Shown: positions 11,051 to 59,691, counted from the stretch's first letter. The stretch: DNA of 64,000 nucleotides from IMGVR_UViG_3300032315_001715:310001-374000; one strand, 5' to 3'. Program-made: numbers and translations. The notes: generated by a model from the sequence alone, not told the origin.

Positions 11051-11125
11051 GCTTTGCTGTGCTGGTGGACAGCCGGAGGCCTCTAAAACCTCGCAGTGAT
11101 GGTTCAATTCCGTCGCAGAGCACCA
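11051..11125 (+). tRNA. tRNA with CUA anticodon (amber suppressor-type), discriminator A73
   Basis: Acceptor GCTTTGC/GCAGAGC + ACCA; anticodon loop CT-CTA-AA (11083-11085); T arm GATGG-TTCAATT-CCGTC. Confidence 0.82.
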
Positions 11126-11130
11126 AGTTT

Positions 11131-11206
11131 GCTTCCATAGTTCAGTGGTCAGAACGGAGACCTCTAAATTCTCTTGTCGCAGGTTCGAATCCTGCTGGAA
11201 GCGCCA
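11131..11206 (+). tRNA. tRNA with CUA anticodon (amber suppressor-type), discriminator G73
   Basis: Acceptor GCTTCCA/TGGAAGC + GCCA; D arm GTTC/GAAC; loop CT-CTA-AA (11164-11166); T arm GCAGG-TTCGAAT-CCTGC. Confidence 0.9.
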
Positions 11207-11272
11207 ACATAAATAGGAACGATGATGAGCGAGCTGTAGAACCACCTTAAGACACACATCGATTTAACCTTG

Positions 11273-11304
11273 AACCTGCATGGCTTCTGTCATGCAGGTT
11301 TTTT
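11273..11304 (+). terminator. intrinsic terminator after tRNAs
   Basis: AACCTGCATGG-N6-TCATGCAGGTT followed by T run. Confidence 0.7.
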
Positions 11305-11332
11305 CTTGACCTCAAATCCAAAGGAGAAACAA

Positions 11333-11719
11333 ATGGAGGAAATACTCGAGGAAATACGCGGTATAGCACCGGGCTGGGCCGGGCCAACTACCAAAGCACC
11401 GAACCCTTGGATAGTGGAGAATTTTGAAACCATTATTGCAAGGCATCTTCATTCGGTTCGAAATCCTGATGAGATTGAAATTGATCCAGATGACGGTGCA
11501 ATAACGATTTACTGGTCCAGTCGTGAGCTCAAGCAAACCTTCTCATTATCGTTCCAGTCTAGAACAACGATCATTGGGGTTCTAACGGATCTTCACAATT
11601 ACACGGGATATCCACCGTGGCGACTGCCAATTGAGGATTTGGGATCCATACAAGAAAAGCTAAATCACCCCGCGGTTAAAATACTAACAACCATTGCTAA
11701 CCACAACAGGAGCGAATGA
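11333..11719 (+). CDS. hypothetical protein
   Basis: AAGGAG RBS before ATG 11333. Confidence 0.65.
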   Translation: MEEILEEIRGIAPGWAGPTTKAPNPWIVENFETIIARHLHSVRNPDEIEIDPDDGAITIYWSSRELKQTFSLSFQSRTTIIGVLTDLHNYTGYPPWRLPIEDLGSIQEKLNHPAVKILTTIANHNRSE

Positions 11720-11720
11720 T

Positions 11721-12305
11721 ATGACCACAGAAATCGCATGCAAGGACGCTATTTTCCATTTTAACAAGCATCATTTAGTGGATCCAACCACTCCGCCGTG
11801 GACCATCAAGACCGGCGGCAAGACCTATTACGTGAATCACGTTGAGTGTAACTTACCTTGGAGCACCAAGGAAACACCTGATAATGCCAGCACCAAGGGC
11901 GCAATCAAGATCAAGAAAGCGCTGCTGATCATCAACGACAGCAACGACGCCGAGCTTCGACAGCTTACCAACGGAGATCTTTCAAGGATACGGGCCAACA
12001 AAAGAAACTATGCCAGGATCCTTGTCAGCAGCCGCAAGGACGAGATCAAGGAGTATCTCAAGAAAAACTCCATCTCTCACGGTAAGATCGTACCGGTCTC
12101 TGGTAGCTGCGGATCTTCGTTTGATTTGATTGATATCAAGAATAAATCGGACATGGTGCTGTTATCCCTGTCATTCCATGATTGTTATCGTATCCTTCAA
12201 CCAAATGAAGTTTACTACAAGGTCTATGACGATCCTGATCTTCTTGCTCGCCTCGATGCTGACGATTACTATGACGGCGACAATGATGACGACTCTGAAG
12301 AATAA
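11721..12305 (+). CDS. hypothetical protein
   Basis: AGGAG RBS; FHFNKHHL..PPWTIK..YYVNHV motif; acidic tail. Confidence 0.7.
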   Translation: MTTEIACKDAIFHFNKHHLVDPTTPPWTIKTGGKTYYVNHVECNLPWSTKETPDNASTKGAIKIKKALLIINDSNDAELRQLTNGDLSRIRANKRNYARILVSSRKDEIKEYLKKNSISHGKIVPVSGSCGSSFDLIDIKNKSDMVLLSLSFHDCYRILQPNEVYYKVYDDPDLLARLDADDYYDGDNDDDSEE

Positions 12306-12317
12306 CTAGACCGTGCC

Positions 12318-13184
12318 ATGTTTACATCGCAAAATACAGTCATGAAACCAAAGATATTAACAGTAGGGCATGCTTGCCTAGATATCGTGCATACCGTCCA
12401 GCTGATACCAAAATCAAACACCAAGGTTGCTAGCGACAGGGTGCAGATACAGGTAGGGGGTAATGCGGCTAATGCTGCGGTTGCACTGTGTGATCTAGGA
12501 GCTAGTGCTGATCTATGTACGGTGCTTGGTCGGGATTCACACCCTTTCACCCGGATACTGTTAGCATTGCTAAAGGAACGATGCGTTGGCGTCAATTACT
12601 GTCGATTTGACGAGGTCCAGGATTGCCCGAATTCAACCATCATGGTATTGCCAAATGGTGAACGGGCTATCGTAAACTGGCAAGCAGATGAAATACGATC
12701 TGCCGTGTCAGCACCGGCATCTCTAGACCCATATCAAATGGTCATTGCCGATGCATATCGATTACCAATGATTCGACAGATATTTGCCCTGGCTCGAAGC
12801 AAGGGTGTGCCGACCATGCTTGATGTTGACGGAGTGTTACCTGACATTGGACTGCTACCTTCGGCTGACCATATATGGTTTAGCCAAGAAGCGTGGCGAT
12901 GCCAGCGGATATCATTATCGGATTTACAGGCTAGATTTGGAGGCATCGTTGGTGTAACCGACGGCGATCGTCCGGTAACCTGGATTGATCGAGATGGCAA
13001 GATACGATATCATCAGCCGCCCCAAGTTATTGCTAAAAATACGCTTGGGGCAGGCGACGTGTTTCGAGCTAGATTAGCTCTTGGGCTTTGCTTGAACGAA
13101 TCCGTCAAAGATGCGATTAATGCCGCTTGCATAACCGCAGGTGAGCACATTATCGAACAACCGCTAACTAGGACCATCCAATGA
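12318..13184 (+). CDS. PfkB family carbohydrate kinase
   Basis: GGNAANAAVAL, NTLGAGDVF. Confidence 0.9.
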   Translation: MFTSQNTVMKPKILTVGHACLDIVHTVQLIPKSNTKVASDRVQIQVGGNAANAAVALCDLGASADLCTVLGRDSHPFTRILLALLKERCVGVNYCRFDEVQDCPNSTIMVLPNGERAIVNWQADEIRSAVSAPASLDPYQMVIADAYRLPMIRQIFALARSKGVPTMLDVDGVLPDIGLLPSADHIWFSQEAWRCQRISLSDLQARFGGIVGVTDGDRPVTWIDRDGKIRYHQPPQVIAKNTLGAGDVFRARLALGLCLNESVKDAINAACITAGEHIIEQPLTRTIQ

Positions 13185-14032
13185 AAACCCTAACCAGCAA
13201 CGTTGATTCCAGCGTAAATTTCATCGAAAAGGAATTAACTGGGTTCATCGAAAGCCGATATGTCAGGCGGCGTCGAGAATATTTCATTGCGTATCTCAGC
13301 AGCCAGACCGGTTGCAATCGAGGATGCAAGATGTGCCATCTCACCGCTACTAAGCAAACGCAATCCACAAATTGTGATCTGCAGGATTTTGTTGATCAGC
13401 TTGAAACAGTGTTTGCACACTACGACAAGGATTTACCTGCCGATTACATCCATGTAAACTGGATGGCTAGGGGAGAACCACTGGCTAATCCTACTGTTAC
13501 AGAGACTGGCACCGAATTGCTGATTAGATTGGGACAAATGGCTAGATCCAGGAATCTGCCTATCAAGTTCAATGTATCTACCATCATGCCGTTGACCATG
13601 AGAAAATCGTTGGTTGAGGTCTTCCCCGTGATAACACCGACCATTTATTATAGCATCTATTCGGCTAACCAGGACTTCCGTAACAAGTGGTTACCCGGAG
13701 CAATGCCGATTGATCGATCACTGAAAATGCTGGCCGAATATCAAAGATTCAGCAAAAAGATCATCAAATTTCACGGCGCGTTTATCAAGGACGAAAATGA
13801 TCGAGAAAAAGATGTATTAAATATGCTCACAGCCATACAACAGCACGGCATAGTTGGGGAATTCAACATCGTGAGATACAATCCATTTAGCGATGATCAG
13901 GGTGTTGAAAGTCCGTATCTAAAGCAGATCATGCAGTTGATCGCCGAGCGCATGCCATGCAAGATCATCCCTAGGGTTGGCGAGGATGTTTATGCCAGCT
14001 GCGGAACGTTTGTCGGAGAGGGTACCATTTGA
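13181..14032 (+). CDS. RlmN/Cfr-like radical SAM protein (divergent)
   Basis: SSQTGCNRGCKMC (CxxxCxxC), MARGEP (cf. MGMGEP), C-terminal ASCG. Confidence 0.8.
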   Translation: MKTLTSNVDSSVNFIEKELTGFIESRYVRRRREYFIAYLSSQTGCNRGCKMCHLTATKQTQSTNCDLQDFVDQLETVFAHYDKDLPADYIHVNWMARGEPLANPTVTETGTELLIRLGQMARSRNLPIKFNVSTIMPLTMRKSLVEVFPVITPTIYYSIYSANQDFRNKWLPGAMPIDRSLKMLAEYQRFSKKIIKFHGAFIKDENDREKDVLNMLTAIQQHGIVGEFNIVRYNPFSDDQGVESPYLKQIMQLIAERMPCKIIPRVGEDVYASCGTFVGEGTI

Positions 14033-14268
14033 TGATAACGATACTATCAACTACCCCTGATATGATCCATACTGGCATTAAGGATGGCAATGATGGAAAG
14101 CAGATATGCATAGCCATGGCACAGGATGTTGTTGACGCCATACGCTGGGTGCAAGAACATCGCAAGAAAATGGAAGCAGAAATTGAGCTTCGTAACAGCA
14201 CCCCAGCATTGGCCAGTGCGTGGGATCAGTATCAGGTCATGCTTCGCATAGTGATGGACGATGTCTAA
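14029..14268 (+). CDS. hypothetical protein
   Basis: TPALASAWDQYQVML motif; coupled to upstream gene. Confidence 0.65.
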   Translation: MMITILSTTPDMIHTGIKDGNDGKQICIAMAQDVVDAIRWVQEHRKKMEAEIELRNSTPALASAWDQYQVMLRIVMDDV

Positions 14269-14285
14269 CAGATATAAATACTAAT

Positions 14286-14864
14286 ATGTTTAGTGGACTA
14301 ACCAGCAAGCTGTTAATAGCGCAGATGGTAGTGATCATTTGCATGGCTACGGCAGGATATTTTTATTTTAATCATAGCCAATCGGTTATTACTGGTCTAA
14401 CGGCTGATAAAACACGACTAGAACTAGCTGTACAAACCCAAGAAGCAACAATCGCCGCTCAACAAGAGGCAGCAAGCCGGCAGAATACCGAAAGCGTTCA
14501 GTTACAACGACGCCTTGTTGATGCCGAGACCCAACGACGCACACTGGAAACAAGGCTTAGAAGCCAAAATTTAGAAGCCATGGCTAGGACTAACAGCGCG
14601 GATCTCGAACAGCGTATTAATAGAGCAACAACGCAAGCCTTCCGTGACATTGAAAATCTAACAAGACCAACTGACAGACCGGTGCCGGCAGCAACACCGC
14701 CGCAGCCCACAACCTTGCCGGCAACGTCTCAGCCGTCTGGTTCAACCAATCCTCGGATCGCGCCAGCGGCGATAACACAGCCGACGGTCCTTCCGGCAAC
14801 GTCTCAGCCGTCTGGTTCAACCAATCCTCAGCCTCCACCGAGGCCGCCGAGGCAATACCCATGA
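14286..14864 (+). CDS. putative inner-membrane spanin (Rz-like)
   Basis: N-terminal TM helix + coiled coil; TATAAATA at 14273; followed by lipoprotein gene. Confidence 0.65.
   Translation: MFSGLTSKLLIAQMVVIICMATAGYFYFNHSQSVITGLTADKTRLELAVQTQEATIAAQQEAASRQNTESVQLQRRLVDAETQRRTLETRLRSQNLEAMARTNSADLEQRINRATTQAFRDIENLTRPTDRPVPAATPPQPTTLPATSQPSGSTNPRIAPAAITQPTVLPATSQPSGSTNPQPPPRPPRQYP
14718..14829 (+). repeat. 37-bp exact direct repeat (14718-14754, 14793-14829)
   Basis: CCGGCAACGTCTCAGCCGTCTGGTTCAACCAATCCTC twice, period 75 nt, in frame. Confidence 0.9.
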
Positions 14865-15223
14865 TGAAATCCCTAATATCCATAGCATCTATTCTTTTTC
14901 TAACCGCATGTTCATCGTCGGGTAACATCAGAATAACTTCTAGACCACTTGAAATTGATATTACTAGGACCGCTGATCCGACCGGGATACAAATGCTTCC
15001 GGTGAATTTCAGGGTGGTTACCCGAGAAACTCTTGCATCGTTTATGGATGAATTGTCCAGAAGCCAGGGAAATTCATCCCCGGTTTTTATCGCCATTACC
15101 ACCAGGGATTATGAAAATCTAAGCTTGAATCTTTCAGATTTACGGCGATACATCGAGCAACAACAAGCGGTAATCATTTACTATCGACAGCTGACAACAC
15201 GTAATCCAACCGGTAATCAATGA
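14861..15223 (+). CDS. putative outer-membrane spanin lipoprotein (Rz1-like)
   Basis: Lipobox FLTAC; overlaps end of i-spanin. Confidence 0.65.
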   Translation: MMKSLISIASILFLTACSSSGNIRITSRPLEIDITRTADPTGIQMLPVNFRVVTRETLASFMDELSRSQGNSSPVFIAITTRDYENLSLNLSDLRRYIEQQQAVIIYYRQLTTRNPTGNQ

Positions 15224-15287
15224 GCATTTAATTATATCCATACCGACCTTTAAATATCATTATTAAGTTAAAAGGTCCAGATGTAAC

Positions 15288-15788
15288 ATGCCAATTTCCG
15301 GTACAAATAATATGCCACCGATCGATGAGGCTGATCCACAGCCTCGCCGTACTGCTCAGGACGAAATCGATCTGATGGATCCACATAATACCACATTATC
15401 GGGAAGTTCTAACTCGGTGCAATCTTCGTCTGAGGCCCAACAATCGGGAGCCACAATGTCTTATACCCAAAATCAACGATCAGATTCGCCAGGCCAGATC
15501 AACATTGACCATTCCATGAAAATACAAGAAGAACACTGGATCAAATCATATTGGAGACCTGCCATGGGCTGGCTGTATATGTTGATTTGTTTTGTGGATT
15601 TTGTGGTGTTTCCGGCGTTGGCCATGTTTTTACCGGCCTTTTTCTCCGGAGTTGGTATTACAATGCCATATACCGCATGGCAAAGCCTGTCGTTAAGCAA
15701 CGGTGGATTGGTCCATGTTGCCTTTGGTGCGATATTGGGTGTTACAGCATGGAGCCGAGGCCAGGAAAAGCTTAATGGTACTAGATGA
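15288..15788 (+). CDS. putative holin (3TM-type)
   Basis: WRPAMGWLY...FVVFP...GAILGVTAWSRGQEK; next to spanins. Confidence 0.65.
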   Translation: MPISGTNNMPPIDEADPQPRRTAQDEIDLMDPHNTTLSGSSNSVQSSSEAQQSGATMSYTQNQRSDSPGQINIDHSMKIQEEHWIKSYWRPAMGWLYMLICFVDFVVFPALAMFLPAFFSGVGITMPYTAWQSLSLSNGGLVHVAFGAILGVTAWSRGQEKLNGTR

Positions 15789-15802
15789 TGTGTTAGGATT
15801 GG

Positions 15803-15907
15803 TTACTTGTAGATATACGGATCCCTCTTTCTCATTTCCTTTAGTTTACGCTTAAAAGCAAAATGATCCTGGATCTTTTGATACAATCTAGCTATGAAAT
15901 TAAACAT
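15803..15907 (-). CDS. 34-aa conserved small phage protein
   Basis: MFNFIARLYQKIQDHFAFKRKLKEMRKRDPYIYK; KRDPxIYK ending recalled from T4-like phages; not in ORF track. Confidence 0.55.
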   Translation of the reverse strand: MFNFIARLYQKIQDHFAFKRKLKEMRKRDPYIYK

Positions 15908-22756: not shown

Positions 22757-24151
22757 TTATTTCACAACAATGGTTTTGCAAAGTTGATAAAATTGCGCAA
22801 GCTCGGGGAATGTACTGATGAAGTTGGTACCTCTCCTCTTGTCGTGCTCATCAACAAATACTGCAAAGTCTCTTCTAGCGGCATTGATGCTGATGTTTTC
22901 ATTTCGATGGGGCGGAGCCTTGGTAAAGTTTATTAGCCGCTCGAGGTGTAGGATTTCATAGTGCATGAAATGTCCGGCCTTGGAAGTATCAGTGTTGGCC
23001 TTCATGAACTCCATTGCAGGATCAAGATCATTTTTATGCTCGTTGGTTAATATCGAAAGGCACTGATGATGTGGGTATCGCAGGATGGATATGTCGAGGC
23101 TTAGTCTGGTAGTACCATGCTTGGCCTTCAACCCCAGCAGATCAGATAACAGCGTGGTATATGTGGTGATGCTAAACACGTTGGCGGTGCTCATTATGGT
23201 CACGCGACAATCTGGTATTTCGGTTAAAAATTGATCTATCGTTGCGTACCATCTCTTATAATCAAGACCAAACCTTCCATATTCTGCTGCCGCTCCGGCA
23301 GCATCGACGCTGGTAAACAGATTAAAGCTCTTGATCTTTTTTTCGACTATTAGATGCTTCACCTTCTCCATGAATGGGTTAAGCTTTGAATCCGGTACAC
23401 ATGCATTGGTGTTTACAGCAAGCTCGAGCTGTGGTTGTGGACGTTCACTTAGGAAATCCAACACCTTGAAAGTATCATTGGCCAGCAGCGGCTCACCACC
23501 TGTTATGCGGAAGATTCGCAAATCCTTGACCAATGAGGGCCACCAATCCCAGAACGCTTCAACATAGGGATTATGCTCCTTGTGATGTATCGGCATTTCC
23601 TTGTTAGCTCGATACCACTCGAGATTATTAAATTTGCCGGAAGTTGGATACGGTCCGTGGTGTTCTATTTCTTCGGTCCAACGGCTTGAATAGACCGGAG
23701 AACAATACGAACACTTGAAATTGCAAATGTTGCTGAAGCTTACTTCTACATATGATGGGTTGATGTTACGCTCGGGAACATTATTGACGATTTCTCCCAT
23801 GCGATCGGCGCTCCATGGAGCAGCTGACTTGGCTACGCGATCGGAAAAGAATTCGTCCTTGTCGTAGTTTGGTAGATCCTCGACATTCCAGCAATACTGG
23901 CATTCGGTCGGTCTTTTGCCGTCGATCATGTCTTTTCTTTGCTGTTTTTTGAACTGTGTGTTGTGCAGGGCAGATGGGTCCTTTGCAAGCTCGTCAAGTG
24001 GTACCAGATGTGTTCTCGGGTGGTGGCAGCTATGGGTCCGTCCATTGTGGAGATGAAGGGTTACTTGGGTCCATTTTGCCGCACAAAAGCTAGGGCTCAC
24101 GTTGTTTAAGTCCTTCTTAACCTCTGCATATGCATCTTTTGGGTCTCTCAT
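22757..24151 (-). CDS. radical SAM protein with N-terminal Cys-rich (twitch-like) domain
   Basis: FCAAKW...SCHHP...CQYCW; CNFKCSYC; ITGGEP. Confidence 0.85.
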   Translation of the reverse strand: MRDPKDAYAEVKKDLNNVSPSFCAAKWTQVTLHLHNGRTHSCHHPRTHLVPLDELAKDPSALHNTQFKKQQRKDMIDGKRPTECQYCWNVEDLPNYDKDEFFSDRVAKSAAPWSADRMGEIVNNVPERNINPSYVEVSFSNICNFKCSYCSPVYSSRWTEEIEHHGPYPTSGKFNNLEWYRANKEMPIHHKEHNPYVEAFWDWWPSLVKDLRIFRITGGEPLLANDTFKVLDFLSERPQPQLELAVNTNACVPDSKLNPFMEKVKHLIVEKKIKSFNLFTSVDAAGAAAEYGRFGLDYKRWYATIDQFLTEIPDCRVTIMSTANVFSITTYTTLLSDLLGLKAKHGTTRLSLDISILRYPHHQCLSILTNEHKNDLDPAMEFMKANTDTSKAGHFMHYEILHLERLINFTKAPPHRNENISINAARRDFAVFVDEHDKRRGTNFISTFPELAQFYQLCKTIVVK

Positions 24152-26734: not shown

Positions 26735-27313
26735 ATGGTAAACATTTTTCTCGTCAGCGACACTCACTTCGGTCATAAGAACATCTGTCTGTTCAACGGA
26801 CCGGACGGAAGTCCACTGCGTCCATGGGATGATCCCGATGAGATGGACGAGGCCATGGTCGAAAGATGGAACGGTGTGGTTAAACCAAATGACGTGGTTT
26901 ATCACCTCGGTGACGTGGTGATGAACCGCCGATGTCTTGCTACCGTTGCCCGGCTCAACGGAGACAAACGGCTAATACTCGGTAATCACGATATTTTTGA
27001 TCACAGCGACTATCTCGTGCATTTCAAACGGTTGCACGGTAGTTACAAGCTGGACAACTTCCTGCTAACCCATATACCGGTGCATATTGACTCAGTTGCC
27101 CATTGGACTGAATGTAACATCCACGGGCATGTACATGCCCACGATATTCCCAGTGGCAAGTATTTCAACGTCAGCGTGGAAATGATCGGCTACACGCCGA
27201 TTAGCCTTGAGGATGCTAGGGTTCGAATCAGGGAAAAGCAGGAAAAATATAAGGTTGACATGCAGCAGAATGATGCTAATTTGCCAATTGAAAATAGGAG
27301 AACTGCCGAGTGA
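26735..27313 (+). CDS. calcineurin-like metallophosphoesterase
   Basis: SDTHFGH, LGD, GNHD, THIP, HGHVH. Confidence 0.9.
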   Translation: MVNIFLVSDTHFGHKNICLFNGPDGSPLRPWDDPDEMDEAMVERWNGVVKPNDVVYHLGDVVMNRRCLATVARLNGDKRLILGNHDIFDHSDYLVHFKRLHGSYKLDNFLLTHIPVHIDSVAHWTECNIHGHVHAHDIPSGKYFNVSVEMIGYTPISLEDARVRIREKQEKYKVDMQQNDANLPIENRRTAE

Positions 27314-38417: not shown

Positions 38418-38710
38418 ACGCAGCAGCCAATACCACACCGGCTACTTTTCCGAAACCGTTGTTTTCTTATATCGGTCGAATGTACCATGCCGTGGTTGCC
38501 GCAGGGATACCGGTTGGTTCTCTTAATCGAGATCGTGCTGACACGGTGGTAAGGGATCTATCAAGGACCAATTGGAAGAAAGATAATCTTGACATACACG
38601 CCATGTGGAACAGCGGTGGTGATACGTGGGGACAACTGATCAAGGATGTTAAGAGCTATGCAAAGGATGTAAGCAAGCACCAACGATCGGAAAAATCGAC
38701 CAAAACCTGA
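38399..38710 (+). CDS. hypothetical protein
   Basis: 103 aa, overlaps upstream gene. Confidence 0.55.
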   Translation: MQTNNVNAAANTTPATFPKPLFSYIGRMYHAVVAAGIPVGSLNRDRADTVVRDLSRTNWKKDNLDIHAMWNSGGDTWGQLIKDVKSYAKDVSKHQRSEKSTKT

Positions 38711-38789: not shown

Positions 38790-38876
38790 ATGTTACGATA
38801 TATTGAAATACGTGCCGCTGAAGGCGGTGATGATAGCAAGCTGTTTGTTCGAGATTTGGCTAATATGGTCCGTTGA
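38790..38876 (+). pseudogene. truncated class I peptide chain release factor-like gene
   Basis: GGAGG RBS + MLRYIEIRAAEGGDDSKLFVRDLANMVR*, matching the LEVRAGTGGDEAALFAGDL motif of RF1/RF2/PrfH; not in ORF track. Confidence 0.7.
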
Positions 38877-38887
38877 TAAATAACTAC

Positions 38888-51465: not shown

Positions 51466-52563
51466 ATGGCACACAAGTACGATATGGCCGTATTCATCGG
51501 CCGATTCCAACCATTCCATCTAGGTCACCGAGCGGTGATCGAACAGGGGCTTGAACAAGCAGACCACGTCGTGGTGCTTGTTGGCTCCGCCCGCAGCCCG
51601 CGTTGCCATCGCAATCCGTTCAGCTTTGCCGAGCGCAAGGAAATGATCCTCGGTGCATTTTCCGGTGAGGTTCGCGATCGGGTCATCGTCCTGCCACTCG
51701 AGGATGCTGCATACAATGATGCGCAGTGGGTCCTCAATGTGCAAAAGCAGGTAGAGCAGGGTGCATGGTACGCCGGTCTGGCTGGTGCTACACTAGGTAC
51801 AATTTCCGAGAAGGTCCGCGTTGCGCTCATCGGTCACAGCAAGGACGCAACCAGCTACTATCTCAAGCTGTTCCCGCAGTGGGATAACATTGAGGTGTCC
51901 AATTTCCGAGATCTCAACGGCACGCTGATCCGCAGCACGTTTTTCAGCAACATCGGACACATGTGGGTCAAGGACGCTGACGGTCACCGCGCCGGCGATC
52001 TCCCGCGTGATGCAACCATCACTGGCAACGTGCGAGAGTTCCTCGAAGGATTCATTGACACGCCAGAATACAAGCTGATCCGGGATGAAAACGAGTTCAT
52101 CCGCAAGTACCGTGCGAGCTGGGCATCAGCGCCTTACGCACCGACATTCGTTACCGTGGATGCCATCGTGGTGCAGAGTGGACATGTGCTGCTGGTGCGC
52201 CGAGGTGCCAACCCGGGCAAGGGACTGTGGGCCATGCCTGGCGGGTTCATCAACGCTGATGAACGCATCCGCAATGCCGTGATCCGCGAGCTTCGTGAGG
52301 AAACCGGCATCAAGGTGCCTGATGCGGTGCTGCGTGGTAGCATTGTTGAACAGGACGTGTTTGACGATCCCAATCGATCGGCACGTGGACGCACGATCAC
52401 GCATGCGTTCCTCATCAAGCTGCGTGACGAGACCGCGCTGCCCAAGGTCAAGGGCATGGACGATGCTGACAAGGCACGATGGGTTCCCATCAGCCAGCTC
52501 AAGCCCGAGGATTTTTTTGAAGATCACTACCATATAGTGATGTCAATGTTGGCTCGGATCTGA
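51466..52563 (+). CDS. nadM: bifunctional NMN adenylyltransferase / ADP-ribose pyrophosphatase (NadM-Nudix)
   Basis: GRFQPFHLGH, RNPFSFAER; Nudix box GGF...AVIRELREETG. Confidence 0.95.
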   Translation: MAHKYDMAVFIGRFQPFHLGHRAVIEQGLEQADHVVVLVGSARSPRCHRNPFSFAERKEMILGAFSGEVRDRVIVLPLEDAAYNDAQWVLNVQKQVEQGAWYAGLAGATLGTISEKVRVALIGHSKDATSYYLKLFPQWDNIEVSNFRDLNGTLIRSTFFSNIGHMWVKDADGHRAGDLPRDATITGNVREFLEGFIDTPEYKLIRDENEFIRKYRASWASAPYAPTFVTVDAIVVQSGHVLLVRRGANPGKGLWAMPGGFINADERIRNAVIRELREETGIKVPDAVLRGSIVEQDVFDDPNRSARGRTITHAFLIKLRDETALPKVKGMDDADKARWVPISQLKPEDFFEDHYHIVMSMLARI

Positions 52564-52566
52564 ATC

Positions 52567-52938
52567 ATGTACACCGTGCAAGAAATGCGCGACATCGTCG
52601 CCCTGTGCCGGTTCGAGGAGTGGAACATCGTGGTTCGCATGGATGGAACTCGGCCGTATCTCCAGGTACATGCACCCAATGGACGGGATGCTGAAACCGG
52701 CTTGCCCATGCCATGGACCGGTCGCAAGTGGATGCTGAGTCCCCATATGTGCAAGAACGAGATCGTCACCACGGCTTTCAAGGCGGTGATGACTGCCATG
52801 GAGCATGAGGTCCGTGAGAGCTTTCGTTATCGCGGTGTAGCGATCTTCAATCCGCACCAGGACCCGGATAAGCTCGTTGACTTTGTCAGCGATGATGCTA
52901 ATATGCAAGAGAGAACTAACGTGGCGTTTGCCGCGTAA
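52567..52938 (+). CDS. conserved phage hypothetical protein
   Basis: WTGRKWMLSPHM...AMEHEVRESF; lies between NAD genes. Confidence 0.75.
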   Translation: MYTVQEMRDIVALCRFEEWNIVVRMDGTRPYLQVHAPNGRDAETGLPMPWTGRKWMLSPHMCKNEIVTTAFKAVMTAMEHEVRESFRYRGVAIFNPHQDPDKLVDFVSDDANMQERTNVAFAA

Positions 52939-52995
52939 TCCAATACTACCCCGTGGGGATAGACCCCGCGGACAACAAAGCAAAGGAGATTTGCA

Positions 52996-54387
52996 ATGCG
53001 TTATAATCTACTGTTGGATACCGACAGCTACAAGGCAAGCCATGCCTTCCAGTATCCGCCGAACACCACCCGGGTATTCAGCTACATCGAAAGCCGAGGT
53101 GGCGAATTTGATCGCACGGTGTTCTTCGGCCTGCAGATGTACCTCAAGCAATACCTGTCCACGCCCATTACCCAGGACATGGTCGATGAGGCCGCAGAAT
53201 TCTGGGCCGCACACGGCGAGCCCTTCAATCGCGAAGGCTGGGAATACATCGTCAATGCACACGGCGGTCGCCTGCCGGTGGTGATCAAGGCCGTTCGCGA
53301 GGGTGCGGTGATCCCGACCCGCAACGTCTTGCTCACCATAGAAAACACCGATCCGCGGTGCTTCTGGCTCACCTCCTTCCTGGAAACCGCGTTGCTGCGT
53401 GCCGTTTGGTACCCGACGACGGTGGCCACGCTGAGCTGGCACGGCAAGCAGATCATTCGGTCCGCCCTGGCAACGTCCGCCGAGGACGTTGAGGGCCAGC
53501 TGCCGTTTAAGCTGCACGACTTTGGTGCCCGCGGTGTAAGCTCCCGGGAGAGCGCCGGTCTCGGTGCCGCTGCCCACCTGGTGAACTTCATGGGATCGGA
53601 CACCGTCACCGGTGTTCTCTACGCCCGGGAATTCTATGGCGCTCCCATGGCAGGGTTTTCCATCCCCGCTGCTGAACACTCGACCATCACCAGCTGGGGT
53701 CGCAGCCGTGAAGCTGACGCATATGCCAACATGCTGGCACAGTTTGGCAAGCCCGGTGCGCTGTTTGCCGTGGTCAGCGACAGCTATGACATCATGAACG
53801 CTGCGCGGGAGATCTGGGGCGGCGACCTCAAGCGGTCGGTGATGTCCAGTGGTTCCACCCTGGTGGTGCGTCCGGACAGCGGCGACCCACTGACGGTGCC
53901 GGTGGATGTCGTGGAAGCACTGGGCGAGCGGTTCGGCTACACCCTGAACTCCAAGGGGTTCCGCGTGTTGCCGAGCTGCGTGCGGGTGATCCAGGGAGAT
54001 GGCATCACCATCAACAGCCTGCCCAAGATCCTGGGCAATCTGCTCGGTTGTGGTTGGAGCGCGGACAACATGGCGTTTGGCATGGGCGGCGGGCTGTTGC
54101 AGCTGGTCAACCGCGATACGTTGAAGTTTGCCATGAAATGCTCGGCTGCCATGATCGACGGCGAATGGGTTGACGTGTTCAAGGATCCCATCACCGACGC
54201 TGGCAAGCAGAGCAAGCGGGGCCAGCTGATGCTGACCCGGGAGACCGGCAAGTGGGAGACCATGCGACTGGGCAGCGGTTTTGACTGGGCCAACAGCCTG
54301 CACACCGTGTGGCAAAATGGCGAGCTTGTGCGGGATTGGACCTTTGATGAGGTGCGTGCGGCCAGCAACGAGCCCGTGCTTGATTAA
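52996..54387 (+). CDS. nadV: nicotinamide phosphoribosyltransferase
   Basis: DTDSYKASH, LHDFGARG, IPAAEHS, VSDSYD, RPDSGDP, IQGDGI, FGMGG. Confidence 0.96.
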   Translation: MRYNLLLDTDSYKASHAFQYPPNTTRVFSYIESRGGEFDRTVFFGLQMYLKQYLSTPITQDMVDEAAEFWAAHGEPFNREGWEYIVNAHGGRLPVVIKAVREGAVIPTRNVLLTIENTDPRCFWLTSFLETALLRAVWYPTTVATLSWHGKQIIRSALATSAEDVEGQLPFKLHDFGARGVSSRESAGLGAAAHLVNFMGSDTVTGVLYAREFYGAPMAGFSIPAAEHSTITSWGRSREADAYANMLAQFGKPGALFAVVSDSYDIMNAAREIWGGDLKRSVMSSGSTLVVRPDSGDPLTVPVDVVEALGERFGYTLNSKGFRVLPSCVRVIQGDGITINSLPKILGNLLGCGWSADNMAFGMGGGLLQLVNRDTLKFAMKCSAAMIDGEWVDVFKDPITDAGKQSKRGQLMLTRETGKWETMRLGSGFDWANSLHTVWQNGELVRDWTFDEVRAASNEPVLD

Positions 54388-55330: not shown

Positions 55331-55387
55331 CGAATGACGCAGGTAAATACCACACAAACAAATATCCCATCTGCGGAGCTCCGTGCA

Positions 55388-57256
55388 ATGACTGATTTTT
55401 TCAAACCAACCAATCGACCTTCCAATCTGCATGAGACCCTGCAATACAGCAACGTTGGTCTTGCTGAAATGCGTGTTGCAGCAATGGCTGGTCCAGATGC
55501 TCCGCTGCATGTGTTCGTGGACAATACTGAACCCATGCCGGTGACGCTGGGATCAGAAACCATAACCATCATAGGTAACATCGCCGTACCCACCACGGTG
55601 AATGTTACATCCACGCCCACCGATCCCGTGCATGTGCATCTAACCGAGGTTGGATCCAGTGGGTTGCTCGACGTGGCTTATCTACCGGTTGGGCAATCTA
55701 CCTCACCATGGATCGTAGTTGGCAATGTGAACATAGCCACCACCAATGGTGGTATTGAGGTCAACAACGACACGGGTAATCCGTTGCGCATCATCGGCAA
55801 TGTCAACACCACGGTCATTAGCACGGTTTCTGTCACACAGGGAACCTCTCCTTGGGTGGTGATCGGCAACACCAACATCACCAATACACCTACCGTTGCG
55901 CTATCAAGCAACGCGGTCACGGCTACGCAGGGAACATCTCCTTGGGTGATGTCAGGCAACGTGAATGCCAGCATCACGGGCACGGTGACAACGACCGTCG
56001 TGGCAGGTGCCACGGATGCGTTTGGTAGGTTGAGGACCTCTGATGGGTTCACCCTGGGAGACTACAAGCATACATATGGAATTGATCCGAATTTCAGGGA
56101 CACCCTTATTAACGGCGGTACCGTCACCCACATACCCAACCAAGCAGCCGCAAGGCTTGCCACGAGCAACAACGTGGCCAGCCGTGCCATACACCAGACC
56201 AAGATGTACCACAACTACATGCCCGGTAAGAGCCAATTGATCGAAAGCACCATCAACTTTTACGAGGCCACGGCCAACGTGACCAAGCGCACGGGCTATT
56301 TCGACGATCTCAACGGCATCTACTTTGAGCAGACCGGTATCGGCGAGCTGGCATTTGTGATAAGGACCAACACCAGTGGCACTCCCAGCGATGTCCGACG
56401 GGTTACGCAATCCCAGTGGAACCAAAATACCTGCAACACCGCGATCGCGGGCACGTCAACCGACGGGTCTAACTACGGGGTATTTGGTACATGGAACCTG
56501 GATATCACCAAGACGCAGATATTCTGGACCGACTTCCAGTGGTTGGGCGTTGGGCGCGTGCGTTGTGGGTTCATCCACAACGGTGAGACCGTCGTAGCAC
56601 ATGAGTTCTACAACAGCAACAACCTACCAGTGGTGTACATGGCCAATCCAAATCTGCCCATTCGCTGTGAGATATTGAACACCGGTGTCACCGCAGGAGC
56701 GTTCTTTGACCAGATATGCTCCACGGTGATATCCGAGGGCGGATATTCGGAAAGTGGGATAGACTTTAGTATCAACTCTGGTACAACAGGTCAAGCAGTG
56801 ACCCTCGCCAACGGGGTGTATCCCATACTGGCCTGGAGGTTGAAGAACACGTTCAGGGGCTATCCTAACCGCGTGGTGGTTCGTCCCGGAAACATGAACA
56901 TCTATGCCGAAAACCGTCCTGCTTACTGGACGCTGATCAAGCTGGATAGCCTGAGCAACATAACCCTTGGTAGCAGCACCTGGACCAGCGCCGACGACGA
57001 CTCTGCCGTGGAATACAACCTCACCGCCACGGCATTCACCGGCGGCGACAGAATGGATGGAGGCTTACTGGGAACCACCAGCCCAGGCGGCAGGGGCACT
57101 GGTGTTGCTCCTATCAATAATCCTAGCTTGGCCAAGAAGAACTTCATCGCACAGAACCAGGATTCAACCAATAGCGAGATATATGTCCTGTGTGCCCAAG
57201 CAATTGGCGGCACGACCACGGTTTGGTGTGACGTTCAGTGGCGCGAGATCTACTAG
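55388..57256 (+). CDS. virion structural protein with VTQGTSPW-type repeats
   Basis: Repeats then conserved DAFGRLR...YMPGKSQ...DFQWLGVGRVRCGF domain; start moved to 55388 (TAAATA 55344, GGAG); ends in TAG. Confidence 0.7.
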   Translation: MTDFFKPTNRPSNLHETLQYSNVGLAEMRVAAMAGPDAPLHVFVDNTEPMPVTLGSETITIIGNIAVPTTVNVTSTPTDPVHVHLTEVGSSGLLDVAYLPVGQSTSPWIVVGNVNIATTNGGIEVNNDTGNPLRIIGNVNTTVISTVSVTQGTSPWVVIGNTNITNTPTVALSSNAVTATQGTSPWVMSGNVNASITGTVTTTVVAGATDAFGRLRTSDGFTLGDYKHTYGIDPNFRDTLINGGTVTHIPNQAAARLATSNNVASRAIHQTKMYHNYMPGKSQLIESTINFYEATANVTKRTGYFDDLNGIYFEQTGIGELAFVIRTNTSGTPSDVRRVTQSQWNQNTCNTAIAGTSTDGSNYGVFGTWNLDITKTQIFWTDFQWLGVGRVRCGFIHNGETVVAHEFYNSNNLPVVYMANPNLPIRCEILNTGVTAGAFFDQICSTVISEGGYSESGIDFSINSGTTGQAVTLANGVYPILAWRLKNTFRGYPNRVVVRPGNMNIYAENRPAYWTLIKLDSLSNITLGSSTWTSADDDSAVEYNLTATAFTGGDRMDGGLLGTTSPGGRGTGVAPINNPSLAKKNFIAQNQDSTNSEIYVLCAQAIGGTTTVWCDVQWREIY

Positions 57257-57313
57257 TGGCAACGGCAAGCCCGTAACAAGTTGTACATGCGTTGATCAGG
57301 TTGATAAAAGTTC

Positions 57314-57341
57314 TTGACCGATTGATCATTTGTGCTATAGT
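57314..57341 (+). promoter_or_regulatory. sigma70-type promoter
   Basis: TTGACC-N16-TATAGT. Confidence 0.7.
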
Positions 57342-57374
57342 GATCCATGTAACGATGGGAAAGACCGCAAGCTG

Positions 57375-57647
57375 ATGCACGACAATTCACATGACGCCAC
57401 GGAAAGCCGCGTGGCACAATGGATCAACGCCAGGACAGGTCTGGGTAGCGGGAACGATCCAGTTGGTTTTGTGCTGGCCAGCTACGATCTCAAGATCCAG
57501 GAAATGGCTGAGATGCGGACAAAGCTTGCAGCCCTTGAAGAAATACTAGCCATGACGGCAAAGGTCTGCGGTCGCAACAACTGCAACTGCCCTCGATCCG
57601 ACCAGGTTAAAAAGCTGGTAAACGCATACATGGAGAAATTCGCATGA
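57375..57647 (+). CDS. hypothetical protein
   Basis: Start after promoter; coupled to rpiB. Confidence 0.55.
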   Translation: MHDNSHDATESRVAQWINARTGLGSGNDPVGFVLASYDLKIQEMAEMRTKLAALEEILAMTAKVCGRNNCNCPRSDQVKKLVNAYMEKFA

Positions 57648-58126
57648 ATCTTGAGGAATATCGCAATGACACCAATCGTGGGTTCATCGTGGCCGTGGCC
57701 AGTGACCATGCTGGCGTTGACATGCGGGTGGCGATCAGGGATCTTTTGAGAAGTACCGGAGCTCGCGGTCATTACGTGATTGATTTTGGTCCGATGCCCG
57801 TCGACGGTCGTGTTGACTATCCGGATTATGCGGCCAAGGTGGCGGAGAGCGTGCTCTCCGGTGAAGCTGATCGAGGCATCCTCATCTGCGGATCCGGCAT
57901 CGGCATGAGCATGGCAGCCAATCGGCACAAGGGTATCCGTTGTGCCATGGTCAGCGATGTCACCTCTGCACGTCTCAGCAGGCAACACAACAATGCCAAC
58001 ATCCTTGCGCTTGGTGCTCGGCTAATCGGCCCTGATCTTGCCTGGGCAATCGTAGAGGAATGGCTCAAGACACCATATGAGGGCGGCAGGCATGACCAGC
58101 GCATCGCCAAGATGGATGTTATGTGA
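57644..58126 (+). CDS. rpiB: ribose-5-phosphate isomerase B
   Basis: SDHAG, DYPD, ICGSGIGMSMAANR, HNNANILALG, GGRH..RI. Confidence 0.95.
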   Translation: MNLEEYRNDTNRGFIVAVASDHAGVDMRVAIRDLLRSTGARGHYVIDFGPMPVDGRVDYPDYAAKVAESVLSGEADRGILICGSGIGMSMAANRHKGIRCAMVSDVTSARLSRQHNNANILALGARLIGPDLAWAIVEEWLKTPYEGGRHDQRIAKMDVM

Positions 58127-58437
58127 TGACCTCGGTAACGGAATGGCCAAAGCCCGTGTCGGACGAACTGGTGGCACGACAGCGTGAGCATTTGGAAAAT
58201 ATTGGTGGCAAGGTCACTGAAGGCCTGCGCAAAGCATTGGGGGCAGCACCCATCCCAACATCAACCAAAGCTTCACGGATGAAAGAGCTGCGTGATACGC
58301 TTGGTATCAGCGTGCAAGAAGCCAAGCGACAGGTGATCAGGGAAGACACACTTGCTGCCATTGATGGTGCTGAAACCATGGAAGATGTCAAGGCCATGCT
58401 CAAGACCATCGTGGAACACTGGCACATGAAATCCTAG
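58123..58437 (+). CDS. hypothetical protein
   Basis: Overlap-coupled; ends in TAG. Confidence 0.6.
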   Translation: MMTSVTEWPKPVSDELVARQREHLENIGGKVTEGLRKALGAAPIPTSTKASRMKELRDTLGISVQEAKRQVIREDTLAAIDGAETMEDVKAMLKTIVEHWHMKS

Positions 58438-58444
58438 GTGGTTT

Positions 58445-58864
58445 CTAGCGAAACCATCCAACTGGCAGTCCATTGGCAATTCTGTGCTGCCATTCTTCCA
58501 CGGTGCCGGGATATCTCCAAGCCCACACTGCTACCATCAGCATGAACGCACCTAGGCCTGCGACCAACAAGATGTTACCCGTGGTCAAATAAAGCGTGAT
58601 CAAGCTGATGTCCATTGTTATCACCATCATCCACTTGGCACGGGTGGGAAACACACGCTTTTCGCTCCAGTTCCTGAGGAATGGACCAAACAGCCGATGA
58701 TTCATGATCCAATCGTGCCATCGTTTTGAACCCTTGGCAAAGCAAAATGCTGCCGCAACGGTGGGAGTGCTCCAGGGTATCCCCGGCGTTATAATACCGA
58801 TGTATGCAATGCCTAGGAAGATGAATCCAAGGCACATCCAGAAAATCTTTTTGATTCGTTCCAT
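58445..58864 (-). CDS. DUF454/YbaN family membrane protein
   Basis: IGIITPGIPWSTP..AAAFCFAKGSKRWHDW..NH..FGP; start 58864 after TAAATA. Confidence 0.85.
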   Translation of the reverse strand: MERIKKIFWMCLGFIFLGIAYIGIITPGIPWSTPTVAAAFCFAKGSKRWHDWIMNHRLFGPFLRNWSEKRVFPTRAKWMMVITMDISLITLYLTTGNILLVAGLGAFMLMVAVWAWRYPGTVEEWQHRIANGLPVGWFR

Positions 58865-58941
58865 GTGTGTATTTACGATGTTGTTGACAACCATCGAGAT
58901 GCGTGCTTTAATCTACATGGATATCAATCGTAGGATTACAA

Positions 58942-59691
58942 ATGAAACCTCTCTATAACATCAACGGCCTTGTCCATTGGACGCAACGTGAAATCTCAAT
59001 GCGGGAAGCCATGCAAGAGAGATTTGCCGCGGAGGTGTTTGAGTGGCTTCGTGGAACCAATCCTGCTTGGCGGTTCGATCGCGTGGAAGCGCCCATCATG
59101 ATTCCCCGCACAATGATCAACCCTAACTACACCAACGACGATCTCTGGGTGTTTGAACGGCACGACGAGCACGAGCCTGAGCTGGTGGCACGACCAGAAA
59201 CCACACCCAGCACCTATGCCTGGATGGTTGACCAGCTGCAAGGCCACAACGGCATCCGCCTTCCCTGGTGCGTGTGGCAAAGCGGCAAGAGCTTCCGTGC
59301 TGAGCAGGACCAGGTGCTGAAGAACATGCGCCTCAAGGAATTCTACCAGATGGAATTCCAGTGCGCTTACTCCTCGGACACCGCCAACGACTATCATGCC
59401 GACTGCCTTGAACCCATGCGCAAGATGCTAGGGTCGGCGCTGGGCCTGCCCACCCGCGTGATTGCCAGCGACCGGCTGCCCAGCTACAGTGAAATCACCA
59501 TGGACGTGGAGGTGGATACCGGTGAGCGTTGGATGGAGGTTTGCTCTATCAGCCGTCGCACGGACTTTCCCATCAGGAACCGTTACCAGGGCAAGAAGGG
59601 CATCGTGGAGACCGACATCATGGTGCTTGAGATCGCCATTGGACTTGATCGCTGCGTGAACGCACGTACCATCGCTAACAGTCTGATCTAA
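58942..59691 (+). CDS. alpha2-type glycyl-tRNA synthetase-like catalytic core, no anticodon-binding domain
   Basis: ARPETT, motif 2 QSGKSFRAE...RLKEFYQMEFQ, WMEVCSISRRTDF, motif 3 EIAIGLDR, then ends. Confidence 0.8.
   Translation: MKPLYNINGLVHWTQREISMREAMQERFAAEVFEWLRGTNPAWRFDRVEAPIMIPRTMINPNYTNDDLWVFERHDEHEPELVARPETTPSTYAWMVDQLQGHNGIRLPWCVWQSGKSFRAEQDQVLKNMRLKEFYQMEFQCAYSSDTANDYHADCLEPMRKMLGSALGLPTRVIASDRLPSYSEITMDVEVDTGERWMEVCSISRRTDFPIRNRYQGKKGIVETDIMVLEIAIGLDRCVNARTIANSLI

What the first reader, a model, noticed from the sequence alone, without database searches (positions are those of the whole stretch)
11051..59691. Synthesis: dispersed toolkit for stop-codon control without genome recoding
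The separately seen parts (two CUA tRNAs, amber mini-ORF, RF remnant, anticodon-blind GlyRS core, RlmN-like enzyme 2 kb from the tRNAs, Thg1-like protein and RNA ligase) could form a readthrough/translation-control system, or a snapshot of gain or loss of code 15. They are not clustered, so the link is purely inferential.
Basis: inference. Interest (0 to 1): 0.65.

Follow-up and report, generated by a model that had tools for sequence, protein, structure and literature searches.

The report
Amber-suppressor tRNA pair in jumbo phage

Summary
The window is bases 310001-374000 of a 452,799-bp phage genome. That genome is best read with code 11.

**Confirmed.** There are two tRNAs with anticodon CUA at 11051-11125 and 11131-11206. 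They form a unit with a sigma-70-type promoter and an intrinsic terminator.

**Other parts, all present.**
- The amber mini-ORF is near chance level.
- The "RF remnant" is a 28-codon ORF with a 22-residue RF1-like stretch. It has no GGQ or PxT part.
- The "GlyRS core" belongs to a family of more than 1,100 proteins of about 250 aa, found in phages and Alphaproteobacteria.
- The "RlmN-like" gene is a widespread jumbo-phage radical-SAM protein. It lacks RlmN's resolving cysteine.
- The Thg1-like and RNA ligase genes lie outside the stated range. They are clustered with the GlyRS core, at 58.9-63.7 kb.

**Linkage.** I compared six whole relatives and seven further cultured or uncultured phages. 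Suppressor tRNAs, the GlyRS core and the RlmN-like gene are distributed independently. No genome shows in-frame TAG.

**Prior knowledge.** A CUA tRNA pair in a standard-code phage, with no read-through targets found, was reported for Xanthomonas phage XacN1 in 2018.

**New here.** In all four phages with two CUA tRNAs, one has discriminator base A73 and the other G73.

**Verdict.** This is a new member of a known kind. The toolkit link is not supported.

The parts
11014..11042 (+). Sigma-70-type promoter of the suppressor unit (TTGACA, 17-nt spacer, TAAATT, TG before the -10)
   Evidence: It matches 10 of 12 consensus positions and is the only promoter-like site in 10700-11500. TTGACA boxes also precede the CUA tRNAs of G004 and Phosso.
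11051..11125 (+). tRNA with anticodon CUA, type A73 (acceptor GCUUUGC, encoded CCA). It is atypical: a weak D stem and a C31-A39 mismatch.
   Evidence: ARAGORN. Rfam gives only 21 bits. It fits the shared cloverleaf of ten phage CUA tRNAs.
11131..11206 (+). tRNA with anticodon CUA, type G73 (acceptor GCUUCCA, encoded CCA); canonical
   Evidence: ARAGORN; Rfam tRNA 65.3 bits; alignment and covariation.
11222..11239 (+). Five-codon ORF ending in TAG, lying between the second tRNA and the terminator. It is in frame with the next gene (ATG 11333) and open through to it.
   Evidence: Sequence. The class is common: 147 in the window. The in-frame-and-open property arises in 3.5% of dinucleotide shuffles. 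It is absent downstream of the CUA tRNAs of G002, G003, G004 and XacN1.
11272..11307 (+). Intrinsic terminator (13-bp stem, T run) closing the tRNA unit
13181..14032 (+). Radical-SAM protein of the RlmN/Cfr superfamily (phrog_27142). It is not shown to be linked to the tRNAs.
   Evidence: The adjacency is not conserved.
14220..15788 (+). Lysis cassette (two Rz-like spanins and a 3-TM holin), 3 kb downstream of the tRNAs on the same strand. All three genes end in TGA and none has an in-frame TAG.
38790..38876 (+). 28-codon ORF with a 22-residue RF1-like stretch. It has a GGAGG ribosome-binding site and overlaps the start of an endolysin-like gene (38873-39850).
58942..59691 (+). 249-aa class IIa aminoacyl-tRNA-synthetase catalytic core, closest to alpha2-type GlyRS, with no anticodon-binding domain
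60146..61402 (+). ATP-dependent RNA ligase of the DRB0094 (Deinococcus) type with an N-terminal OB fold
   Evidence: TIGR02306 at 175.9 bits against a cut-off of 151; also PF09414 and PF21189.
61924..62376 (+). Nudix hydrolase in the same block
62845..63702 (+). Thg1-like protein (3'-5' nucleotidyl transferase) of the bacterial TLP type
   Evidence: PF04446 E 5e-29; best PDB match 4KGK, E 4.6e-34; phrog_4717.

Best explanation
**The genome.** It is a standard-code jumbo phage. Its host is probably an alphaproteobacterium (inferred).

**The suppressor unit.** Bases 11014-11307 are a stand-alone transcription unit: a sigma-70-type promoter, two non-identical tRNAs with anticodon CUA, and an intrinsic terminator. 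This is the local copy of a module that recurs in standard-code jumbo phages with near-complete tRNA sets. In such phages, where there are two CUA tRNAs, one carries discriminator A73 and the other G73.

**How it most likely works (inferred).**
- Host RNA polymerase makes the tRNAs.
- Host synthetases charge them through their acceptor ends. Two acceptor identities may mean two amino acids, or robustness across hosts.
- The charged tRNAs compete with RF1, giving partial read-through of UAG across the infected cell.
- Shown here: no phage gene needs them to decode an in-frame TAG.

**The other listed genes are not a stop-codon toolkit.**
- GlyRS-like core, RNA ligase, Nudix and Thg1-like: one block of tRNA repair and maintenance genes, next to the 41-tRNA region that starts 5 kb past the window.
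- RlmN/Cfr-like gene: a common jumbo-phage radical-SAM gene.
- RF1-like ORF: too short to act as a release factor.
- Amber mini-ORF: close to chance level.
For: **No recoding.**
- Code 11 gives the best gene calls in G000, in five relatives and in Phosso.
- No TAG-specific in-frame continuation was found.
- The best fusion candidates are separate genes with their own starts and complete domains.
- Conserved cross-genome alignments hold no TAG-specific internal stops.

**The tRNAs look functional.**
- The unit has its own promoter and terminator.
- Ten CUA tRNAs from six phages share a cloverleaf, with compensatory changes at 18 of 20 pairs. CUA-A37-A38 is invariant.

**The module recurs.**
- G002 has a tandem pair; G003 and G004 have one CUA tRNA each.
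- Phosso has two.
- XacN1 has a tandem pair, and its authors found no targets.
- All four pairs are one A73 plus one G73.

**Charging must fall to the host or to the GlyRS-like core.** G000 has no GluRS/GlnRS, LysRS/AspRS or TrpRS/TyrRS family gene.

**The genes are distributed independently**.

**The GlyRS-like core is a broad family.**
- It has more than 1,100 members, including Rhizobium and Agrobacterium chromosomes where the neighbours have nothing to do with tRNA.
- Its tRNA neighbours differ by phage: Gly in G004, Ser in XbC2, CUA in Phosso.

**RNA repair by Thg1 and ligases is a described theme in jumbo phages**.
Against: - There are no expression, charging or proteome data.
- The amino-acid identity of both tRNAs is unresolved.
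- The first tRNA scores poorly on the tRNA model.
- G000 does not avoid TAG: 66 of 539 stops. It shows no excess of back-up stops after TAG. Efficient suppression should therefore carry a cost.
- In Phosso one CUA tRNA lies 330 nt upstream of the GlyRS-core gene. A link between those two cannot be excluded.
- TAG stops are conserved between orthologs more often than expected: 5 of 16 against 18 of 262, p 0.006. This hints at some gene-specific use.
Confidence: 0.55

Rival explanations
1. The anticodon-blind GlyRS core charges the CUA tRNAs, the RlmN-like enzyme modifies them, the Thg1-like protein and ligase mature or repair them, and the RF fragment modulates termination.
For: - In Phosso a CUA tRNA lies 330 nt upstream of the GlyRS-core gene, close to the RNA ligase, CysRS and a peptidyl-tRNA hydrolase.
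- G000, G004 and Phosso carry both the core and CUA tRNAs.
- The core keeps motifs 2 and 3, so it is probably active.
- G000 encodes no other candidate synthetase among the families searched.
- In G002 a Thg1 paralog lies 3.3 kb from the pair.
Against: - The distributions are independent.
- The acceptor stems of the CUA tRNAs share no common identity set. They run G1-C72 or C1-G72, with A73 or G73, and none has the U73 and G3-C70 of the phages' own tRNA-Gly.
- The core also sits next to tRNA-Gly or tRNA-Ser in other phages, and stands alone in bacterial chromosomes.
- The adjacency of the RlmN-like gene is unique to G000.
- The loops read A36-A37-A38, which from established knowledge is the MiaA substrate type rather than the RlmN m2A37 type.
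- The RF fragment has no catalytic part.
Confidence: 0.1
2. Targeted use. Read-through is needed at particular sites. Either specific TAG-terminated genes gain extended isoforms, or the UAG mini-ORF plus terminator acts as a suppression-sensing attenuator. That attenuator would gate the downstream operon (11333-15788), which ends in the lysis cassette.
For: - The mini-ORF is in frame with the next gene across the terminator; this arises in 3.5% of shuffles.
- No other promoter-like site precedes the downstream genes.
- The spanin and holin genes follow on the same strand. This echoes the code-change modules upstream of lysis genes in recoded phages.
- TAG stops are conserved in orthologs at p 0.006, including a virion protein in G000 and G005.
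Against: - The read-through extensions are 0-52 residues long and are not conserved.
- No mini-ORF follows the CUA tRNAs of relatives.
- Proximity to lysis genes is not conserved in Phosso.
- The XacN1 authors found no read-through targets.
- The statistics rest on 16 gene pairs and one 65-nt spacer.
Confidence: 0.15
3. An evolutionary leftover or intermediate. The tRNAs and the RF1 fragment are relics of a recoded ancestor, or first steps toward code 15, with little present function.
For: - Standard-code phages with suppressor tRNAs have been proposed as intermediates.
- G002 combines two CUA tRNAs, a full RF2 and only 3% TAG stops.
- G000 holds an RF1 fragment.
- The first tRNA looks degenerate.
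Against: - The pair is kept across phages that share only 30-45% protein identity and span 31-55% GC. Its stems carry compensatory changes and its anticodon loop is invariant.
- TAG is not depleted in G000 or G004.
- No recoded relative was found.
Confidence: 0.1
4. A role outside translation, or an inert one. For example, decoys for host anticodon nucleases or other tRNA-binding defence proteins.
For: The genome invests in tRNA repair: Thg1-like protein, RNA ligase and Nudix. No decoding target was found.
Against: The full acceptor ends with encoded CCA, the canonical T loops and the invariant CUA-A-A loop all fit a decoding tRNA. No known nuclease is known to me to target CUA anticodons.
Confidence: 0.1

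Closest known systems
Tandem tRNA-Sup (CUA) pair of Xanthomonas jumbo phage XacN1 (Yoshikawa et al. 2018, PMC5852040)
   Same: - Two adjacent CUA tRNAs of 75-76 nt, separated by a 5-7 nt spacer.
- The A73 tRNA comes first and the G73 tRNA second.
- Standard code and a large tRNA set.
- Thg1-like and other tRNA-processing genes are also present.
- No read-through targets were found.
   Different: - The XacN1 pair sits inside the tRNA array in the terminal repeats. It has identical bodies and no promoter or terminator of its own.
- The G000 pair lies 57 kb from the main array. Its two bodies are only ~70% alike, and it has its own promoter and terminator.
- XacN1 gave no tblastn hit for the GlyRS core or the RlmN-like gene.
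Code-change modules of recoded phages (suppressor tRNA + synthetase + release factor; Borges et al., bioRxiv 10.1101/2021.08.26.457843)
   Same: A suppressor tRNA sits upstream of lysis genes. A release-factor sequence and a synthetase-like gene are in the same genome.
   Different: - There are no in-frame TAG codons anywhere in the genome.
- The parts are dispersed rather than adjacent.
- The RF is a 28-codon fragment, and it is of the RF1 type. RF1 would oppose UAG suppression, not help it.
Sinorhizobium phage Phosso (PV764938.1), the closest cultured relative found
   Same: - 469 kb and 49.5% GC.
- 121 of 539 G000 proteins have a match.
- Standard code.
- Two CUA tRNAs, one G73 and one A73.
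- A GlyRS-core homolog at 54% identity, and an annotated RNA ligase nearby (no tblastn match to the G000 ligase).
   Different: - Its CUA tRNAs are 275 kb apart, and one abuts the GlyRS-core gene.
- No match was found to Thg1, the RlmN-like gene or an RF.
RNA repair gene sets of jumbo phages (Iyer et al. 2021, PMC7824862) and the T4 Pnk/Rnl paradigm
   Same: An RNA ligase, a Thg1-type 5'-end repair enzyme and a Nudix hydrolase lie in one block beside the tRNA region.
   Different: No polynucleotide kinase or CCA-adding enzyme was seen in the block. The ligase is of the DRB0094 type, not Rnl1 or Rnl2.

Membership tests
Amber-suppressor tRNA | Cloverleaf with a 7-nt anticodon loop, U33, anticodon CUA and a purine at position 37 | tested here: met
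   ARAGORN. Rfam gives 65 bits for the second tRNA. The shared structure shows compensatory changes at 18 of 20 pairs. The first tRNA is weak on Rfam.
Amber-suppressor tRNA | Aminoacylated, and decodes UAG on the ribosome | not testable with these tools
Code 15 (TAG = sense) phage | In-frame TAG inside conserved genes, and better gene calls when TAG is read as sense | tested here: not met
Class-I release factor RF1 | Full PCRF domain with the PxT motif, plus an RF-1 domain with GGQ | tested here: not met
   Only PCRF positions 103-126 match. There is no RF-1 domain in the genome, and tblastn with the G002 RF2 finds nothing.
Glycyl-tRNA synthetase (alpha2 type) | Class II motifs 2 and 3 and a GlyRS-like active-site fold | tested here: met
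   S117, R119, E121, G234, D236 and R237 are invariant across 16 sequences. The top fold matches are GlyRS, E 4e-13.
Glycyl-tRNA synthetase (alpha2 type) | C-terminal anticodon-binding domain, and a family score above the curated cut-off | tested here: not met
   The protein is only 249 aa and matches only the core (residues 163-303 of 454). It scores 52 bits against a cut-off of 312.
RlmN/Cfr radical-SAM RNA methyltransferase | CxxxCxxC cluster motif and the C-terminal methyl-carrier cysteine (C355 in RlmN) | tested here: met
   C45, C49, C52 and C274 are invariant in 13 sequences.
RlmN/Cfr radical-SAM RNA methyltransferase | The resolving cysteine (C118 in RlmN), the N-terminal domain, and a score above the curated cut-off | tested here: not met
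   An invariant Tyr38 aligns with the Cfr cysteine. The match starts at profile position ~100. Scores are 42-53 bits against cut-offs of 290-550.
Thg1-like protein (bacterial TLP) | Thg1 catalytic domain above the Pfam cut-off, with closest similarity to a bacterial TLP | tested here: met
   101 bits against a cut-off of 29. 4KGK at E 4.6e-34, against 1e-15 for eukaryotic Thg1.
RNA ligase, DRB0094 type | Nucleotidyl-transferase domain plus an N-terminal OB fold, above the equivalog cut-off | tested here: met
   TIGR02306 at 175.9 bits against 151; PF09414 and PF21189.
XacN1-type CUA tRNA pair in standard-code jumbo phages | Two CUA tRNAs, one A73 and one G73, in a code-11 genome with a large tRNA set and no read-through targets | tested here: met

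The most novel reading that the evidence does not exclude
The A73/G73 CUA pair is a conserved two-identity suppressor device of standard-code jumbo phages that inserts two different amino acids at UAG. In G000 it would be wired into regulation. The UAG mini-ORF is in frame across the terminator, so it would sense suppressor activity and open transcription of the downstream operon, which ends in the spanin and holin genes. In phages such as Phosso, the minimal GlyRS-like enzyme would charge one member of the pair without reading the anticodon.
Probability: 0.1. Interest if true: 0.75.

Novelty: new member of a known kind. Interest (0 to 1): 0.35.

Why it matters
Suppressor tRNAs in phages are usually explained as the means of reading a recoded genome. 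Here, as in XacN1 and Phosso, they are kept in genomes with no recoding at all, so their role remains open.

The regular pairing of an A73 and a G73 tRNA suggests selection for two charging identities. Two cultured phages carry the module: Phosso on Sinorhizobium meliloti and XacN1 on Xanthomonas citri. The question can therefore be tested directly.

For annotation, the result warns against reading tRNA-repair and RNA-modification genes as a code-change system merely because they share a genome with a CUA tRNA.

Tried and rejected
- **Recoding.** ORF statistics and greedy gene calls were run under stop sets without TAG, TGA or TAA. Code 11 was best in all seven genomes. These tests used stop sets in scripts only; no translation under another code was sent to any tool.
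- **TAG fusion candidates.** The halves have separate complete domains and their own start codons.
- **Amino-acid identity of the tRNAs.** All of the following were inconclusive:
  - similarity to the phage's own tRNAs and to those of five other phages;
  - BLAST against phage and E. coli collections;
  - comparison with a Rhizobium genome, where the best match was the 3' half of tRNA-Arg(UCU);
  - acceptor-stem tables.
- **Closer relatives carrying the same tRNA operon.** An exact 20-mer scan of viral contigs found only an identical contig.
- **RF mini-ORF homologs in relatives.** None found.
- **More RF remnants in G000.** None found.
- **Back-up stops after TAG.** No enrichment.
- **Conservation of read-through extensions.** None.
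- **Megablast of 20 kb against the phage collection.** No match.
- **Not used.** Complex prediction and the exhaustive protein-representative search were not run; the word search and the family scans settled the proteins.

Full report
**Setting.** The window is bases 310001-374000 of a single 452,799-bp virus contig with 49% GC, rated complete by CheckV. The genome has 43 tRNA genes and a tmRNA. Forty of the tRNAs lie between 378.8 and 414.5 kb on the minus strand, starting 5 kb past the window end. Two tRNAs with anticodon CUA stand apart, at window 11051-11125 and 11131-11206 on the plus strand.

**Is the genome recoded?** No.
- A simple codon-usage gene caller gives the highest coverage and total score with all three stops: 539 genes and 86% coverage, ending in TAA 247, TGA 226 and TAG 66 times. 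Dropping TAG, TGA or TAA as a stop lowers both measures.
- Open frame after a TAG stop is no longer or more coding-like than after TAA or TGA.
- The eleven cases where TAG separates two coding-like stretches behave as neighbouring genes. The downstream parts have their own start codons, often with a ribosome-binding site.
- In the two best cases the downstream parts carry complete domains from their first residues: a mannosyltransferase and GTP cyclohydrolase I.
- tblastn of every protein of six related genomes against each other found only a few internal stops, of all three kinds, at poorly aligned gene edges.

**The suppressor unit.**
- A TTGACA-17-TAAATT promoter (10 of 12 matches) ends 8 nt before the first tRNA. 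A 13-bp hairpin with a T run follows 65 nt after the second.
- The second tRNA is canonical, at 65 bits on Rfam. The first is called by ARAGORN but reaches only 21 bits, owing to a weak D stem and a C-A mismatch closing the anticodon stem.
- Both encode CCA. The first has discriminator A73 and the second G73.

**Relatives.** Homology searches with the RlmN-like and GlyRS-like proteins led to five large viral contigs, which I fetched whole. They also led to cultured phages.
- CUA tRNAs are present in G002 (448 kb, 31% GC; a tandem pair), G003 (one), G004 (one, with its own TTGACA promoter) and Sinorhizobium phage Phosso (469 kb; two, far apart).
- They are absent from two 77%-complete contigs that have few or no tRNAs.
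- All these genomes are best read with code 11. Their TAG share of stops (3-17%) follows GC content, not suppressor presence.
- The literature search showed that Xanthomonas phage XacN1 was reported in 2018 to have two CUA tRNAs, standard code and no detectable read-through targets. In its record the two tRNAs are tandem and differ only in acceptor stem and discriminator, A73 then G73.
- All four phages with two CUA tRNAs therefore have one of each discriminator type. By coin-flip this has a chance of about 0.06, so it is suggestive only.
- Ten CUA tRNAs align to one cloverleaf with compensatory changes at 18 of 20 pairs. The CUA-A-A segment is invariant. That argues for selection on a decoding tRNA.
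- I could not assign an amino acid.
- G000 encodes no GluRS/GlnRS, LysRS/AspRS/AsnRS or TrpRS/TyrRS family member.

**The amber mini-ORF (11222-11239).**
- ORFs of this class occur 147 times in the window, and no counterpart follows the CUA tRNAs of relatives.
- One property is mildly unusual. Its TAG is in frame with the next gene (ATG 11333), and the frame stays open through the terminator. This arises in 3.5% of dinucleotide shuffles of the spacer.
- I keep this only as an untested idea: a suppression-sensing attenuator.

**The RF remnant (38790-38876).**
- It is a 28-codon ORF with a strong ribosome-binding site.
- Residues 5-26 resemble the start of domain 2 of RF1. Pfam PCRF gives 17.7 bits, E 5.5e-4 for the genome. 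The top 17 PDB hits are all RF1, at the same position, with 14 of 22 residues identical to the Thermus protein.
- There is no RF-1 (GGQ) domain and no other RF-like stretch in the genome. No homolog exists in relatives.
- It cannot act as a release factor. RF1 ancestry would also work against UAG suppression.
- G002 encodes a full RF2 with the SPF motif, and G004 an ArfB-like protein. Termination factors do therefore occur in this group.

**The GlyRS-like core (58942-59691).**
- It matches only the catalytic core of alpha2-type GlyRS.
- A confident model (pLDDT 86) is closest to GlyRS structures, then to ProRS.
- Motif 2 and motif 3 residues are invariant, so it probably forms an aminoacyl adenylate.
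- It belongs to a family of more than 1,100 proteins of about 250 aa, found in jumbo phages and in Rhizobium, Agrobacterium and Caulobacter-type chromosomes at 56-60% identity. There the neighbours are unrelated to tRNA.
- In phages it sits beside tRNA genes of various kinds: two tRNA-Gly in G004, tRNA-Ser in XbC2, and a CUA tRNA in Phosso.
- It occurs in XbC2, CcrBL9 and LR745206. A pattern that recovers all six CUA tRNAs of Phosso and XacN1 finds none in those three.

**The RlmN-like protein (13181-14032).**
- It is a distant Cfr/RlmN relative belonging to phrog_27142.
- It lacks the N-terminal domain. An invariant tyrosine stands where RlmN and Cfr have the cysteine that, from established mechanism, resolves the enzyme-RNA crosslink.
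- It sits inside ordinary tRNA arrays in two relatives and near Thg1 in G002. None of 29 metagenomic loci has a CUA tRNA nearby.
- It also occurs in 201phi2-1, CcrPW and Kabachok, which lack the CUA pattern.

**The repair block.** The GlyRS core, a 130-aa ORF, the DRB0094-type RNA ligase, small ORFs, a Nudix hydrolase, a 175-aa ORF, the bacterial-type Thg1-like protein and a further radical-SAM protein lie head to tail on the plus strand from 58942 to beyond the window end. RNA repair sets with Thg1 and ligases are a described feature of jumbo phages, XacN1 included.

**Judgement.** The proposed functional link among the dispersed genes fails the distribution test. The best reading is a conserved suppressor tRNA module, already known from XacN1, beside an unrelated tRNA-maintenance gene set. 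Points that keep some doubt alive:
- the Phosso adjacency of a CUA tRNA and the GlyRS core;
- the excess conservation of TAG stops among orthologs: 5 of 16 against 18 of 262, p 0.006, but with short unconserved extensions;
- the lysis cassette 3 kb downstream of the tRNAs.

**Limits.**
- There are no expression or charging data.
- Gene calls come from my own simple caller.
- Several relatives are incomplete contigs.
- The CUA pattern scan can miss non-canonical tRNAs.
- The host assignment to Alphaproteobacteria is an inference from Phosso, from the bacterial homologs of the core, and from a GTA-type holin match.

Noticed in passing
window 13181-14032 and alignment A2: The phage RlmN/Cfr-like family (phrog_27142) keeps the radical-SAM cysteines and the methyl-carrier cysteine. 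It has an invariant tyrosine in place of the resolving cysteine, and no N-terminal domain. In RlmN, loss of that cysteine traps a covalent enzyme-RNA adduct, so this family must work differently.
   Followed up: partly
window 51466-54387: An NMNAT-Nudix fusion and a nicotinamide phosphoribosyltransferase form an NAD+ salvage pair. NAD salvage genes lie 2-5 kb from the GlyRS-like core in G000, CcrBL9 and XbC2.
   Followed up: partly
window 38399-38710; G001 131824-132175: The 103-aa ORF just upstream of the RF1-like mini-ORF has a homolog in G001. There it sits right after the RNA ligase gene and is followed by a duplicated 27-residue copy of the ligase C-terminus. This ORF may be a mobile cassette that leaves gene fragments downstream, which could explain the orphan RF1 piece.
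   Followed up: partly
window 14220-15788 and 38873-39850: A lysis cassette (two Rz-like spanins and a GTA-type 3-TM holin) lies 3 kb downstream of the CUA tRNAs. A separate endolysin-like glucosaminidase starts inside the stop of the RF1-like mini-ORF.
   Followed up: partly
window 55334-57256; G005 149682-150707: A virion structural protein (phrog_1645) ends in TAG in both G000 and G005 at 30% identity. Overall, TAG stops are conserved in 5 of 16 ortholog pairs against 18 of 262 for other stops (p 0.006).
   Followed up: partly
window 27310-28767: A full-length RpoD-type sigma-70 factor (regions 1.2, 2, 3 and 4, plus the non-essential region) is encoded by the phage.
   Followed up: no
genome 383049-407395 (outside the window): Several tRNAs with leucine anticodons (UAA, GAG, UAG) are 77 nt long with short variable arms, unlike bacterial tRNA-Leu. 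Nearly all the phage tRNAs encode their CCA end.
   Followed up: no
G002 425360-426439 (locus L110 1420-2499): A distant standard-code relative with a tandem CUA pair encodes a full RF2 (SPF motif). Only 22 of its 658 called genes end in TAG.
   Followed up: partly
Phosso 446731-446806 (locus L169 6731-6806): The A73 CUA tRNA of Phosso shares its 5' acceptor strand with the G73 tRNA of G000. It has U-U mismatches at pairs 3-70 and 4-69.
   Followed up: no
window 22757-24151, genome 373855-375033, 394499-398061: The genome carries at least five further radical-SAM proteins, including a twitch-domain type. It also carries peroxiredoxin, ClpP, ferritin and superoxide dismutase genes within the window.
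   Followed up: no
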